Assembly: GCF_006345805.1 (NCBI RefSeq)
Contig: NW_021836099.1
Location: 1 to 25,475 of the forward strand
DNA length: 25,475 bases
Direction of reading: 5' to 3'
From: Octopus sinensis
Taxonomy: Eukaryota
In this document: in pieces, positions 6,691-20,415 of the stretch
Layout of the letters: each line of letters opens with the position of its first letter
Position numbering within the stretch: the first letter of the stretch is position 1
Translations under genes and position numbers: made by a program
Notes under the pieces: model-generated
Databases searched by the model: none
Told to the model about the DNA's origin: nothing
The model's input: only the letters and a program-made list of their open reading frames with translations

Positions 6691-7009
6691 TAAGTATGTC
6701 AGTGTGTGAGTTGGTCTCAGAACAGTTTGGTGGCATTATTTACATACCTTGAATATTAAAACATATTGTAAGTATCGCGTGTTTTTACTGTACGTAAATC
6801 CATGACATGTTTATTAAAGTTACATTCAATCTTTTATCTTATTAGTGTCAAGTTGTTACTGTTTATATTACCAATTATATATATACACGTTCTACTTGGT
6901 TCTTTTGGATTTTTTAAATTTATAACAAAGTGAAGTTGAATATTACTTGGATAGTAGAAAAACGCACTTGCGAAGTGACTTTTTGTCTAGCTGACTGATC
7001 TCTCTCTTT

Positions 7010-7140
7010 CTCTTTCTCACTCTCTCTCTCTCTCTCTCTTTCTCTCTATCTATCTATCTCTGTCTCCTCTATCTCTATCTCTCACTCTCTCTCACACACT
7101 TTATCTCGCCTCCACTCTTTCCCTCTCTCTCACACACACA
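7010..7140. repeat. (CT)n/(CA)n low-complexity tract
   Basis: Direct inspection. Confidence 0.85.
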
Positions 7141-9170: not shown

Positions 9171-9235
9171 CGATGTGAGAGCAACTACTACGTTATAGAC
9201 TTCATTTAAACTTTATAGAGTATCAATAAATGTTT

Positions 9236-9288
9236 GTGGTGTATGTACCTTATGTGTGTATGTACCTTATGTGGTGTATGTACCTTAT
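9236..9288. repeat. 3 x 17-18 bp tandem repeat GTG(G)TGTATGTACCTTAT
   Basis: Units at 9236-9253, 9254-9270 and 9271-9288, head-to-tail with no spacers. Confidence 0.95.
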
Positions 9289-9529
9289 GCTAAGGATAGA
9301 TCCGGGTTTTACGTGAAACGTAACTGGAGGGATTTTAAGGGTTCTAGCTGTGTGCTGCACATGATGAAGGGCAGAGGTGTGGTTATGCTTTCTCGATATG
9401 AAGATCGTTTGCATTTCTATTCTAATGAAAGACACAAACTTGGGATAACCTCACAGTTATAGAGGAATTTATTTATAACTGCATTAACAACACAATATAC
9501 ACACAAAAATACACATTCATATAAATGTA

Positions 9530-9689: not shown

Positions 9690-9744
<55 letters not shown>

Positions 9745-9745
9745 C

Positions 9746-9799
<54 letters not shown>

Positions 9800-9800
9800 C
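9530..9800. repeat. (ATGT)/(TA)n/(TAGA)n compound microsatellite
   Basis: Direct inspection. Confidence 0.96.
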
Positions 9801-9829
9801 TACTGTATAATATCACATCCTATGATGAG

Positions 9830-10444
9830 TGGCAGCGTTCACACTACACACCATTGAAATAGTCTTGCACATTTACCTCCCACCATATGAACGAACTCAC
9901 AGCGACGATTTTGCACGGTGATCTCTGTAGAGATCTAAATCCCAAAATCTAGGCTACCCTTTAAGGTACCCAAAATATCTGAACTCTTAGATCAGTCTGC
10001 ACAAAGGTCAAGTAAGACTGAGCTTGGAATGTTACACCGATTTATTTAGATATTTATACAGTTTGTCTTTGTACCTGAGCCATGGCTATCCAACATGTCT
10101 GTGTCCATTATCAAGCTGAATATACATAAGGACTCTAGATACTCTTTTGCCATTCATTCTGATGACATGACTAATCCATCCTAGTTGTGACTGCATGACA
10201 AAGGTCTTCATGCTTCCAATTATAAACTTAGTGAAGATATCGGCGTTTCCTATTTTGTTCACATGGGTGTAATCACAGATTGCCCAAAGACAGCTTTTAT
10301 GAAAGACGTCTTGTTGGTTGATGTTCAACCTGAATGGAGTCCAAGATACTGATCCATACAAGAATGTGGCCTGTGCACAGCCTTGTAAACCTCTGTCGTG
10401 GTGTCTAGTTTTCTTTCTCTCTCTCTCTCTCTCCCTCTCTCTCT

Positions 10445-10518
<74 letters not shown>

Positions 10519-10705
10519 CAATGACAGTGTTTGCCAAATGCAGTCGAAGGTTTGCATAAATTACCTCGATATCGAGAGATCCATTTGAGTCCATCTTACA
10601 GCCAAGATATATGAAAGATTTCCCATACTGGAGATTTTTCATTCCATTGACCTTGATAGGGGTGTATAGGAACTGGTGAACTAGTGGCTTCTGTTTGACA
10701 CCTTA
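9830..10705 (-). mobile_element. RTE-clade LINE fragment (RT C-terminal part to 3' end), interrupted by (CT)n at 10412-10516
   Basis: Minus frames give IKVNGMKNLQYGKSFIYLGCKMDSNGSLDIEV..AKPSTAFGK, then FLYGSVSWT...FHKSCLWAI...QSQLGWISHVIRMNGKRVSRVLMYIQL..G.R, RYKDKL and a terminal KCARLF. These follow the RTE motifs YLGS, LLYGxETW, LRWxGHVxRM and RYKD. Confidence 0.88.
10275..10469 (+). repeat. Left arm (source copy) of 195-bp perfect inverted repeat
   Basis: Base-for-base reverse complement of 11663-11857, including the ccc and cgcg interruptions in the (CT)n tract. Confidence 0.95.
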
Positions 10706-10714
10706 TGTGTGTGT

Positions 10715-10794
10715 GTGTGAGTGTGAATGTGTGTGAGTGTGAATGTGTGTGAGTGTGAATGTGTGTGAGTGTGAATGTGTGTGAGTGTGAATGT
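10715..10794. repeat. 5 x 16-bp minisatellite GTGTGAGTGTGAATGT
   Basis: Five exact units counted at 10715, 10731, 10747, 10763 and 10779. Confidence 0.95.
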
Positions 10795-10900
10795 GTGTTA
10801 TATATTACATATATATATATATATATATATAACATATATATATATATAACATATATAAGATATATAACACATATAACACACACACATGCACATATATATG

Positions 10901-11057
10901 CTTTTTTCAGTTTCCGTGTACGAAATGCACTCACAAGGCTTTGGTCGGCCTGTTGTTATAGAAGAATACACTTGCTCAAAGCGCCGCGAGGTGGGACTGA
11001 ACTTTCCACCATGTGGTTGTAAAACAAACTTCTTACCACACAGCCACGCCTGCACCT
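10901..11057 (-). mobile_element. tRNA-derived SINE, 5' half only (same family as 20018-20415)
   Basis: The reverse complement reads GCAGGCGTGGCTGTGTGGTAAG...GTTCAGTCCCAC...GGCCGACCAAAGCCTTGTGAGTG...GGAAACTGAAA. It is alignable by eye to 20020-20168 and has an A-box and a B-box-like motif. Confidence 0.88.
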
Positions 11058-11244
11058 ACAACTAATATATATTGTTAATATGAAATCTGAACGAAATGCA
11101 TATAGTAAGAATTATCCTTCAACCCATTCCGATCCATTTATCTACAACTGAAAGAAATCAGTAACTCTTCTAGTCGCAGTAAGTCCCTCAAATCGCACCG
11201 ATCCTGATGGACATTTAGTGACACTGGGCACAAAACAACCTCAT

Positions 11245-11265
11245 CACTACATACATACATACATA

Positions 11266-11332
<67 letters not shown>

Positions 11333-11470
11333 CATATACATACATATATATATACACAATATATATATTACATATACATACAAAATATATACATACATAT
11401 ATATTATATCCATATATATATGCATCAATATCTATTTGTAGGTGTTGGATGTGCACATACACATACTTAG
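11245..11470. repeat. (CATA)/(TA)n low-complexity tract
   Basis: Direct inspection. Confidence 0.88.
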
Positions 11471-11657
11471 ATGCAGGCTTGTATGTAAGTATAATTATAC
11501 ATGTGTGTGTGTGGGGGGGTATGTGTGTGTTCGTAAATGGGTGGATATATATAATGTACTTAAGTACATGCAGGCAGGTAAAAAAAGTAGAACATGGAAG
11601 AGATAGACAGACAGACAGACAGAGATAGAGAGAGTTTCTTATAATCATGACAGCTGG

Positions 11658-11865
11658 AACCTGAGAGAGAGAGAGAGAGAGAGCGCGAGAGAGAGAGGGA
11701 GAGAGAGAGAGAGAGAAAGAAAACTAGACACCACGACAGAGGTTTACAAGGCTGTGCACAGGCCACATTCTTGTATGGATCAGTATCTTGGACTCCATTC
11801 AGGTTGAACATCAACCAACAAGACGTCTTTCATAAAAGCTGTCTTTGGGCAATCTGTTAACCTGA
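11658..11865. repeat. Right arm of the inverted repeat: 194-bp insertion (11665-11858) flanked by 7-bp direct repeats AACCTGA
   Basis: AACCTGA at 11658-11664 and 11859-11865. The interior is the reverse complement of 10275-10467 plus one extra T at 11858. Confidence 0.9.
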
Positions 11866-18559: not shown

Positions 18560-18750
18560 TATATCTATCTATCTATCCATCTATCTATCTATAAATCTAT
18601 CTATCTATAAATATATCTGTCTGTCTGTCTGTCTATTCATTTATTTATTAATTTATTTTCATTTCTCTCTTTCTCTCCTCTCTCTCTTCTCTCTCTCTCA
18701 CTCTCTCTTTCTCTCTCTTTCTCTCTCTATTTCTCTTTTCTCTCTACCTG
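18560..18750. repeat. (TATC)/(TGTC)/(CT)n low-complexity tract
   Basis: Direct inspection. Confidence 0.85.
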
Positions 18751-20017: not shown

Positions 20018-20415
20018 ATGCAGGAGCGGCTGTGTGGTAAGTAGCTCGCTTACCAGTCACATGTTCCGGGTTCAGTCCCACTACGTGGCATCTTGGGCAA
20101 GTGTTTTCCACTATATCCATGGGCCGACGAAAGCCTTGTGAGTGGATTTGGTAGATGGAAACTGAAAGATTTATATATATATGTATGTATGTGTGTCTAT
20201 ATGTTTGTGTGTCTGTGTTTGTCCACCCAAAAATCGCTTGACAACCGATGCTGGTGTGTTTTACGTCCCCGTAACTTAGCGGTTCGGCAGAAGTACCGAT
20301 AGAATCAGTACTAGGCTTACAAAGAATAAGACTTGGAGTCGTTTTGCTCGATTGAAAGCAGTGCTCCAGCATGGCAGCAGTCAAATAACTGAAACAAGTA
20401 AAAGAATAAAAGAAT
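20018..20415 (+). mobile_element. Near full-length tRNA-derived octopus-type SINE
   Basis: A-box-like CGGCTGTGTGG (about 20027-20037), B-box-like GGTTCAGTCC (20069-20078), internal TA/TG low-complexity linker, 3' body ending GTCAAATAACTGAAACAAG and a short tandem tail TAAAAGAATAAAAGAATA. A second copy at 10901-11057 confirms that it is repetitive. Confidence 0.9.

What the first reader, a model, noticed from the sequence alone, without database searches (positions are those of the whole stretch)
10275..11865. Local templated inverted insertion with a 7-bp target-site duplication
Seen in sequence: 11663-11857 is an exact 195-bp reverse complement of 10275-10469, 1193 bp away, including the ccc and cgcg flaws of the (CT)n tract. 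It is flanked by AACCTGA...AACCTGA, with 2-nt GA microhomology at one junction and one untemplated T at the other. The source copy lies inside a longer continuous RTE relic, so it is the donor. Inference: perfect identity in otherwise heavily decayed DNA means the event is very recent. The geometry fits target-primed reverse transcription of a nearby + strand transcript, with a ...CCTGA-3' nick priming inside the (CU)n tract and a 5'-truncated cDNA. That would be cis retro-duplication of non-element RNA by LINE/Penelope machinery. A DNA-templated repair insertion (polymerase theta-type) at a staggered break is the alternative.
Basis: partly seen in the sequence, partly recalled or inferred. 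Interest (0 to 1): 0.7.

Follow-up and report, generated by a model that had tools for sequence, protein, structure and literature searches.

The report
Local inverted copy-paste insertion, 194 bp
A 194-base piece of a dead jumping-gene remnant was recently copied backwards into a spot 1.2 kb away and is flanked by a 7-base duplication; this is a clean scar of DNA break repair or stray reverse transcription, unusual in detail but a single event of a known general kind.

Summary
Bases 10275-10469 and 11663-11857 are perfect reverse complements (195 nt). The second copy is flanked by AACCTGA/AACCTGA, with a 2-nt GA overlap at one junction and one extra T at the other.

The direction of copying is now well supported. 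Copy A lies inside a 5'-truncated, decayed RTE-like LINE on the minus strand (about 9800-10705), and protein homology runs straight through A's outer edge. The closest DNA relative found (74.6% identical) has 24 nt of purine-rich coding sequence where the window has the 104-nt (GA)n tract. The tract is therefore an in-situ expansion private to this copy. B carries the tract, its flaws and the relic's frameshift, so A is the donor and B a recent copy (95% bound below about 1.5% divergence).

The mechanism cannot be settled from one sequence. I favour DNA-templated snap-back synthesis at a staggered break (about 0.5). The donor lies close by, upstream on the priming strand and inverted, as that model requires. 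Assembly artefact is unlikely.

The host genome could not be searched, so copy number and the empty site are untested. Interest is moderate.

The parts
9800..10705 (-). 5'-truncated, decayed RTE-like LINE relic (C-terminal part of the RT ORF plus a short 3' UTR remnant). It contains the donor.
   Evidence: HMMER search of the relic ORF gave 645 hits at E<=0.001. The long hits carry Exo_endo_phos and RVT_1 domains. tblastn HSPs cover 10702-10559, 10411-10376 and 10370-10038, with one stop and one frameshift. The alignment is colinear with intact ORFs.
9690..9799 (-). (TAGA)n on the plus strand, (TCTA)n on the minus strand: the microsatellite tail at the relic's 3' end
   Evidence: TRF row 9690-9799, period 4, 98% matches. 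Relatives L001, L004 and L005 end in a conserved hairpin followed by (TA)n or ATAG-type repeats.
10275..10469 (+). Arm A, the donor. It is antisense to the relic's RT reading frame: 137 nt of unique sequence plus the first 58 nt of the (CT)n tract.
   Evidence: Protein homology continues across 10275 (CLWAIC|DYTH aligned to CLRAIC|GLSL), so 10275 is not an element boundary.
10412..10515 (+). (CT)n tract, (GA)n on the relic's sense strand. It is an in-situ microsatellite expansion inside the RT coding sequence, and copying started inside it.
   Evidence: TRF row 10412-10515. In L005 (74.6% identical DNA) only 24 nt...GAACGAGGTGGGAATTAAA..., lie between the same flanking codons.
11658..11664 (+). 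Left copy of the 7-bp flanking duplication AACCTGA. Its last GA is shared with the insert (2-nt microhomology). It is the inferred primer 3' end.
11665..11857 (+). Arm B, the inserted inverted copy. There are 193 templated nt if the GA belongs to the target, or 195 nt counted from 11663.
   Evidence: B carries the same KLDTTTEVYKAV / ATFLYGS frameshift as A, and homology stops exactly at 11857.
11858..11858 (+). Single T not templated by the donor
   Evidence: Donor base 10274 is C and would give G, but T is observed.
11859..11865 (+). Right copy of the flanking duplication AACCTGA
   Evidence: Joining the two flanks gives the empty site ...CAGCTGGAACCTGACATCTAG....
10327..10333 (+). AACCTGA inside the donor, mirrored as TCAGGTT at 11799-11805 in B. 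It is the same 7-mer as the flanking duplication and is unexplained.
   Evidence: About 0.02-0.03 occurrences are expected by chance.
10869..11054 (-). SINE-like repeat in the spacer between the arms. It is not part of the event but shows the typical age of repeats here.
   Evidence: 77% identical to 20019-20204

Best explanation
This is a real, recent, local templated insertion made during repair of a staggered chromosome break, with DNA as the template.

Proposed steps:
1. The target ...CAGCTGG AACCTGA CATCTAG... was cut with a 7-nt offset between the two strands. The cause is unknown. Closely opposed nicks and an aborted cut by a LINE endonuclease are both possible.
2. The left end was resected, leaving the plus strand as a long 3' tail ending in ...AACCTGA.
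3. This tail folded back on itself. Its terminal GA paired with TC in the 104-nt (CT)n tract 1.2 kb upstream on the same strand, which offers about 50 landing sites.
4. A polymerase extended the tail for about 193 nt, to position 10275. Polymerase theta and polymerase delta are the usual candidates.
5. The new strand was released, gained one untemplated T, and was joined to the other end.
6. Fill-in of both 7-nt protrusions left AACCTGA on each side.

Shown: the anatomy, the direction of copying (A to B), and the recency. Inferred: the break, its stagger, the resection, the fold-back, the polymerase, and that the template was DNA and not RNA.
For: - The perfect 195-nt inverted copy and the junction details are confirmed.
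- The donor is 1.2 kb away, upstream on the same strand as the inferred primer end, and the copy is inverted. That is exactly the geometry required for in-cis fold-back priming on a resected tail (described).
- Short flanking duplications arise without any transposon when breaks with complementary 3' protrusions are filled in and joined.
- LINE-endonuclease breaks are reported to yield local inverted duplications.
- A reverse-transcription event with no local bias would land within a few kb of its source with probability of roughly 1e-6 in a Gb-sized genome (my estimate).
- The donor is an internal, antisense fragment of a dead element, not anything with its own 3' end.
- The relic family's own 3' end is a conserved hairpin plus a (TA)n or (TAGA)n tail, not (CT)n.
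Against: - The insert is long (about 194 nt) and the template is far (1.2 kb) compared with typical polymerase-theta or MMBIR insertions. Those run from tens of nt upward, and their templates were sought within about 100 bp.
- Those events usually show microhomology at both junctions. Here the second junction has none and carries an added T.
- A clean 7-bp flanking duplication, together with a start inside a simple repeat, is the textbook signature of target-primed reverse transcription. In addition, this genome's LINEs and SINE-like repeats end in microsatellites.
- No read-level, population or transcript data were available.
Confidence: 0.5

Rival explanations
1. Target-primed reverse transcription of a local plus-strand transcript. 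A LINE or Penelope-type endonuclease nicks after ...AACCTGA. The 3' GA pairs inside the (CU)n stretch of an RNA transcribed through the relic in antisense. Reverse transcription runs to a 5' end or truncation point at 10275. The enzyme adds one nucleotide and jumps to the other target strand, which was nicked 7 nt away, giving the duplication.
For: - A 7-bp perfect duplication, a start inside a simple repeat with 2-nt overlap, and one extra nucleotide at the far junction together match LINE insertion anatomy and class-1 templated sequence insertions.
- Retroelements that end in microsatellites are abundant here and in the relic's own family. Octopus RTE elements are described as having a microsatellite directly after the ORF.
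Against: - Nothing in the model explains a donor only 1.2 kb away, unless nascent RNA is used in cis. I know of no demonstration of that for LINEs.
- There is no evidence of a plus-strand transcript.
- Priming would be internal, 46 nt before the end of the tract.
- The only LINE family characterised here has a conserved 3' hairpin, which suggests stringent template recognition, and a different tail.
- There is no intact LINE ORF in the window.
Confidence: 0.22
2. B is an older insertion, made by either mechanism, and its perfect identity to A is maintained by gene conversion between the two inverted arms. 'Very recent' would then be wrong.
For: Inverted repeats 1.2 kb apart can convert each other (general knowledge). 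Identity ends exactly where homology ends, which is also what conversion would give.
Against: - 195 nt is near the lower limit for efficient conversion (general knowledge).
- Both 7-bp flanking copies are intact, although other repeats in the window sit at about 77% identity.
- The 58-nt imperfect microsatellite part is identical unit for unit, despite the high slippage rate of such tracts.
Confidence: 0.08
3. Assembly or sequencing artefact: a chimeric or fold-back read, or a graph path that reversed through the (CT)n/(GA)n repeat.
For: (CT)n is its own class of reverse-complement repeat and can confuse assembly graphs. The sequence could not be checked against reads.
Against: - An artefact would not create a perfect 7-bp flanking duplication.
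- The second junction...CAATCTGT|T|AACCTGA, lies in unique sequence with no shared k-mer to jump through.
- Fold-back chimeras give adjacent palindromes, not a 194-nt insert 1.2 kb away.
Confidence: 0.06
4. Both arms are members of a dispersed, young mobile family (a (GA)n-RTE fragment unit). On this reading B came from elsewhere, not from A.
For: The host genome could not be searched, so copy number is unknown.
Against: - A is colinear with the LINE ORF on both sides, so it is not an inserted unit.
- The nearest relatives found are only 64-75% identical and lack the (GA)n tract.
- There is no third copy in 25 kb and none in the metagenome collection.
Confidence: 0.04
5. The flanking AACCTGA pair is the footprint of a cut-and-paste DNA transposon that once sat at the site. 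When it excised, the gap was patched with filler DNA copied from nearby sequence.
For: Excision sites keep both target duplications and can acquire filler DNA (general knowledge; excision footprints are discussed in a paper listed).
Against: - It needs two events.
- No terminal fragments of a transposon remain.
- 7-bp duplications are uncommon among DNA transposon superfamilies (general knowledge).
- The duplications are untouched, whereas footprints usually alter adjacent bases.
Confidence: 0.05

Closest known systems
Microhomology-mediated templated insertions (MMBIR-type 'MMB-TI') and polymerase-theta snap-back insertions (SD-MMEJ)
   Same: The insert is an inverted copy of a nearby template on the same chromosome. 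The first junction has short microhomology. The geometry fits a 3' end folding back on its own strand.
   Different: It is much longer (about 194 nt) and much farther from its template (1.2 kb) than typical cases. The second junction has no microhomology and an added base. A clean 7-bp flanking duplication takes the place of the usual deletion.
Class 1 templated sequence insertion polymorphisms, orphan 3' transductions and processed retrocopies made by LINE machinery
   Same: Non-element sequence is inserted with a target-site duplication of at least 5 bp. Copying begins at a simple-sequence 'tail' and the far end is 5'-truncated.
   Different: Known cases have distant donors, poly(A) tails and an L1 endonuclease motif. 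Here the donor is 1.2 kb away, the 'tail' is an internal part of a (CT)n tract copied from the donor, and the nuclease preference is unknown.
Small tandem duplications from fill-in of complementary 3' protrusions (CST / Pol alpha-primase followed by NHEJ)
   Same: This explains a short direct duplication flanking a repaired staggered break without any transposon.
   Different: Those events are plain duplications. Here 194 nt of templated sequence sit between the two copies.
Fold-back priming and inverted duplications at resected double-strand breaks
   Same: A resected 3' tail anneals within its own strand to an upstream site and is extended, producing inverted sequence. Breaks made by LINE endonuclease are reported to give local inverted duplications.
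   Different: Those events usually continue into hairpin-capped or dicentric chromosomes. Here synthesis stopped after about 194 nt and the break was resealed.
L1 twin priming (5'-inverted LINE insertions)
   Same: An inverted LINE-derived segment with a target-site duplication.
   Different: In twin priming the inverted part is adjacent to the rest of the same new insertion and shares one duplication pair with it. Here B is isolated, 1.2 kb from an old decayed relic, separated from it by other repeats, and has its own duplication.

Membership tests
LINE-mediated retro-insertion of non-element RNA (class 1 TSIP-like, TPRT) | Target-site duplication of at least 5 bp flanking the insert | tested here: met
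   AACCTGA at 11658-11664 and 11859-11865. The chance expectation is about 0.6-0.8%.
LINE-mediated retro-insertion of non-element RNA (class 1 TSIP-like, TPRT) | Simple-sequence or poly(A) tail at the junction where first-strand synthesis starts | tested here: inconclusive
   The insert starts in (GA)n with a 2-nt overlap. However, the repeat is copied flaw for flaw from an internal part of the donor tract, so it is not a true 3' end.
LINE-mediated retro-insertion of non-element RNA (class 1 TSIP-like, TPRT) | Evidence of an RNA intermediate (intron loss, polyadenylation, transcript boundaries) | not testable with these tools
   The donor has no intron or poly(A) signal to be lost, and no expression data are available.
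LINE-mediated retro-insertion of non-element RNA (class 1 TSIP-like, TPRT) | Insertion site matches the endonuclease's preferred cleavage motif | not testable with these tools
   The nuclease preference of this genome's LINEs is unknown. There is only one site (TGA^C).
LINE-mediated retro-insertion of non-element RNA (class 1 TSIP-like, TPRT) | Donor at an unrelated or distant genomic position | tested here: not met
   The donor is 1193 nt away on the same molecule.
MMBIR / polymerase-theta templated insertion | Insert is an inverted (or direct) copy of a template close to the junction | tested here: met
   Exact inverted copy on the same strand, upstream. The distance of 1.2 kb exceeds the roughly 100 bp usually considered.
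MMBIR / polymerase-theta templated insertion | Microhomology at both template-switch junctions | tested here: not met
   There are 2 nt (GA) at the first junction. At the second there are 0 nt plus an untemplated T, and only an imperfect CTG match to the target.
MMBIR / polymerase-theta templated insertion | Usually accompanied by loss, not duplication, of flanking bases | tested here: not met
   A 7-bp duplication is present. It is explicable if the break had complementary protrusions that were filled in.
RTE-clade LINE (identity of the relic that holds the donor) | Single ORF with an N-terminal apurinic-type endonuclease followed by a reverse transcriptase | tested here: met
   Full-length homologues P0018, P0046 and P0077 have Exo_endo_phos followed by RVT_1. 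The relic aligns to their C-terminal 200-250 residues.
RTE-clade LINE (identity of the relic that holds the donor) | Very short 3' UTR ending in a microsatellite | tested here: met
   L001, L004 and L005 have about 60 nt after the stop codon, containing the hairpin CGTCGAAATCGACG and then (TA)n or ATAG repeats. The relic abuts (TCTA)n. This matches the description of the octopus RTE.
RTE-clade LINE (identity of the relic that holds the donor) | Phylogenetic placement of the RT among reference RTE elements | not tested
   No reference LINE library or tree was available. The label 'RTE-like' rests on architecture only.
Fold-back or TIR DNA transposon (arms A and B as terminal inverted repeats of one 1.58-kb element) | Arms are element termini, with a target duplication outside both arms | tested here: not met
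   A's outer edge lies inside a colinear ORF. The outer flanks TAATC and TAACC are not a duplication, and the true duplication flanks B alone.
L1-type twin priming | Inverted and direct segments adjacent, within one duplication pair and of equal age | tested here: not met
   The segments are 1193 nt apart with a SINE-like repeat and microsatellites between them. The relic is decayed whereas B is identical to it.

The most novel reading that the evidence does not exclude
A LINE or Penelope-type reverse transcriptase in this microsatellite-rich genome, probably a cephalopod's, primes on simple-repeat stretches of ordinary nascent transcripts and inserts the cDNA close to the site of transcription. 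That would be a cis 'retro-duplication' pathway generating local inverted repeats, which are potential hairpin-RNA sources, from non-element RNA.
Probability: 0.2. Interest if true: 0.65.

Novelty: new member of a known kind. Interest (0 to 1): 0.35.

Why it matters
Single fresh events with both junctions intact are rare natural records of how breaks are repaired in animal germlines outside the model species.

This event combines features normally assigned to two separate pathways. The flanking duplication and the start in a simple repeat point to reverse transcription. The nearby, same-strand, inverted template points to fold-back DNA synthesis.

A genome-wide census of such events in this species would show which pathway makes them. 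It would also show whether long polypurine/polypyrimidine microsatellites act as landing pads for broken ends.

The event also creates a new 195-bp inverted repeat with a 1.2-kb loop. This is one way for hairpin-forming loci to be born.

On its own, one event in non-coding repeat DNA has no evident functional consequence.

Tried and rejected
- **Word-indexed protein search with the relic ORF:** no hits. The exhaustive HMMER search succeeded.
- **Exact look-up of ten window ORFs in the protein collection**, hoping to find the host genome or independent reads across the junctions: none present.
- **Exact-match scan of the metagenome collection** with a 27-mer from the unique part of the arm: nothing.
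- **Literature search for the SINE-like repeat's sequence**, to name the organism: nothing. The guess that the genome is a cephalopod rests on my memory of that repeat and on the match to the published description of the octopus RTE. It is not shown.
- **Pfam on the relic and on ten other ORFs:** nothing useful, and the window looks non-coding. Rfam and tRNA scans were empty.
- **Other (TC)n tracts at 6999-7093 and 18664-18745:** checked for similar structures. They are plain microsatellites.
- **The AACCTGA inside the donor:** I tried to build a multi-step template-switch model using it. A second fold-back on GAACA would give ...CTGT-T-C-AACCTGA, which explains the extra T, but the observed sequence lacks the C and the model does not explain the left copy. 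Left as an unexplained coincidence.
- **Return of a replicating strand by CTG microhomology to ...GCTGG:** rejected. It predicts CTG-G-AACCTGA, not CTG-TT-AACCTGA.
- **Reverse polarity** (minus-strand RNA from read-through of the neighbouring SINE-like repeat): rejected as less likely. There is no T4 terminator or simple repeat at the 10275 end.
- **Twin priming and the fold-back transposon reading:** rejected (see the membership tests).
Full report
**1. The observation**

The region was read directly and searched for repeats. Arms 10275-10469 and 11663-11857 are 195 nt long and 100% complementary, with 1193 nt between them. A string comparison confirms this. Both arms carry the same CCC and CGCG interruptions of the dinucleotide tract.

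AACCTGA lies at 11658-11664 and at 11859-11865. Its last GA overlaps the arm. T at 11858 is not templated, because the donor's next base (10274, C) would give G. The donor's (CT)n tract runs on to 10515, so copying began 46 nt inside it.

In random placements within this window, a flanking direct repeat of at least 7 nt (slack +-3 nt) occurs 0.6-0.8% of the time. Self-BLAST finds no third copy. It also shows that the only other non-simple repeat pair in the window (10869-11054 against 20019-20204) is 77% identical.

**2. What surrounds the donor**

The minus strand of about 9800-10705 reads as the C-terminal part of a LINE ORF. The motifs seen are ...KSFIYLGCKMDSNGSLDIEV..., KLDTTTEVYKAV...LYGSVSWTPFRLNINQQDVFHKSCLWAICDYTHVNKIGNADIF...QSQLGWISHVIRM... 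and G*PWLRYKDKL.

Pfam does not cover this part of such proteins, and the word-indexed search found nothing. An exhaustive HMMER search gave 645 hits at E<=0.001, the best at 2e-24. The full-length hits carry an apurinic-type endonuclease followed by RVT_1.

The alignment and tblastn show two things:
- Homology runs without a break across the outer edge of arm A. CLWAIC|DYTH in the window aligns to CLRAIC|GLSL in the homologues.
- Homology resumes on the other side of the (CT)n tract, at 10702-10559.

A is therefore embedded in a longer relic and is antisense to its reading frame. The relic has at least one in-frame stop and one frameshift, between 10376 and 10370. Its 3' end abuts (TCTA)n at 9690-9799.

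**3. Relatives of the relic**

Related loci were fetched through proteins. At the DNA level they are 64-75% identical to the relic.

The closest is L005, a marine metagenome scaffold at 74.6% identity. It spans the site of the microsatellite. Where the window has 104 nt of (GA)n, L005 has 24 nt of ordinary purine-rich coding sequence (TGG AAC GAG GTG GGA ATT AAA) between the same flanking codons. The tract is thus an in-situ expansion private to this copy's lineage.

B contains the tract with the same flaws and the same frameshift, and its homology to the ORF stops exactly at 11857. Hence A is the donor and B was copied from it after the relic had decayed.

Zero differences in 195 nt put a 95% upper bound of about 1.5% on divergence between the arms. 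If the published octopus rate applied (distance 0.065 for about 18 My), that would mean under roughly 2 My. The species was not identified, so this figure is only indicative.

**4. Is the relic an RTE?**

- The homologues have a single endonuclease-RT ORF with a C-terminal CxxC...HxxxH motif.
- They have about 60 nt of 3' UTR containing a conserved hairpin (CGTCGAAATCGACG), followed by (TA)n or ATAG-type repeats.

No phylogeny was made, so 'RTE-like' is the proper label.

**5. Mechanism**

The anatomy says the following. A plus-strand 3' end ...AACCTGA was extended using the plus strand of A, or an RNA of the same sequence, as template. Copying started at a TC within the (CT)n tract and ran for about 193 nt. 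One extra T was added, and the product was joined so that the 7 nt are present on both sides. This fixes the polarity and implies a 7-nt offset between the two strand breaks. It does not say whether the template was DNA or RNA.

This genome's retroelements end in microsatellites.

*Against RNA.*
- The donor is only 1.2 kb away. A reverse-transcription event without local bias would land that close with probability of roughly 1e-6 in a Gb-scale genome (my estimate).
- Part of this is ascertainment, since a reader of one window can only recognise local donors. The comparison that matters is how many local events each pathway produces, and that favours an intrinsically local pathway.
- The one LINE family characterised here has a conserved 3' hairpin and a different tail.
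- No intact LINE ORF is nearby.

*For DNA.*
- The donor lies upstream on the very strand whose 3' end served as primer, and the copy is inverted. That is the specific geometry of fold-back (snap-back) priming on a resected tail.
- It is also the geometry of the 'inverted, nearby template' signature of MMBIR-type insertions.
- A GA-3' end has about 50 landing sites in the tract, so a start there is not surprising.
- Flanking duplications arise at breaks with complementary 3' protrusions by fill-in and end joining, without any transposon.
- Breaks made by LINE endonuclease are reported to yield local inverted duplications. A hybrid origin, with a retroelement nick and DNA-templated repair, is therefore also plausible.

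*Against DNA.* The insert is longer and the template farther away than typical. Only one junction has microhomology.

I put DNA-templated fold-back repair at about 0.5 and local reverse transcription at about 0.2-0.25. The remainder is split among gene conversion of an older insert, artefact, a dispersed family, and a transposon-excision footprint with filler DNA.

**6. Artefact**

A reversal through the (CT)n/(GA)n repeat could in principle fake the first junction. The second junction lies in unique sequence, and an artefact would not produce a perfect 7-bp duplication. I consider an artefact unlikely, but it is untested because no reads were available.

**7. An unexplained detail**

The 7-mer AACCTGA also occurs inside the donor at 10327-10333, and therefore as TCAGGTT at 11799-11805 in B. 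About 0.02-0.03 occurrences are expected by chance.

With its left neighbours, the donor reads TGTTCAACCTGA and the right junction reads TGTT-AACCTGA. I could not build a template-switch path that uses this without an extra 1-nt deletion and without leaving the left copy unexplained.

**8. What could not be done**

The host genome, its reads and its transcripts are not in any searchable collection here. Copy number, the empty site, polymorphism and expression are therefore all untested. These are the decisive data.

**9. Verdict**

The event is a templated insertion of a known general kind with an unusual mix of features. The RNA-or-DNA question is open, with DNA favoured. Interest is moderate (0.35). 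If a census showed a real pathway of local retro-duplication primed on microsatellites, the interest would be clearly higher.

Noticed in passing
window 10323-10333 and 11854-11865 (mirror at 11799-11805): The donor contains GTTCAACCTGA. The right junction reads GTT-AACCTGA, so the 7-mer of the flanking duplication, plus three or four preceding bases, recurs inside the copied segment. About 0.02-0.03 occurrences of the 7-mer alone are expected by chance. No mechanism I tried accounts for it.
   Followed up: partly
window 10412-10515; L005 469-492: The 104-nt (GA)n/(CT)n tract grew out of a purine-rich stretch of RT coding sequence. The nearest relative has GAACGAGGTGGGAATTAAA there. It is a clear case of a microsatellite born inside a dead ORF.
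   Followed up: yes
L001 3629-3665, L004 4634-4700, L005 1137-1230; window about 9800-9840 (minus strand): The relic's LINE family has a conserved short 3' UTR with a perfect hairpin (CGTCGAAATCGACG) and GAGTCCATCAT just before a (TA)n or ATAG-type tail. It is conserved between copies that are only 64-75% identical overall, so it is probably the recognition element for the family's reverse transcriptase. A decayed version is visible in the window's relic.
   Followed up: partly
window 10869-11054 (minus strand) and 20019-20204: A SINE-like repeat pair, 77% identical, each followed by long compound microsatellites. From memory it resembles the abundant tRNA-derived SINE of octopus genomes. ARAGORN and Rfam found nothing, and a literature search for the sequence was empty.
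   Followed up: partly
window 10712-10798: A perfectly homogeneous 16-nt tandem repeat (TGTGTGTGAGTGTGAA, 5.4 copies, 100% matches) lies between the relic's 5' end and the SINE-like repeat's tail. Its perfection suggests very recent expansion.
   Followed up: no
whole window: The microsatellite load is extreme: 54 TRF rows in 25 kb, mostly TA, TAGA/GACA, AC/TG and TC units. GC content is 33%. No Pfam-recognisable coding ORF was found apart from the LINE relic. The window appears to be intergenic or intronic repeat DNA of a marine invertebrate, probably a cephalopod.
   Followed up: partly
window 9235-9289: An 18-nt tandem repeat (TGTGGTGTATGTACCTTA, 3.1 copies, 94% matches) in otherwise unique sequence upstream of the relic's tail.
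   Followed up: no
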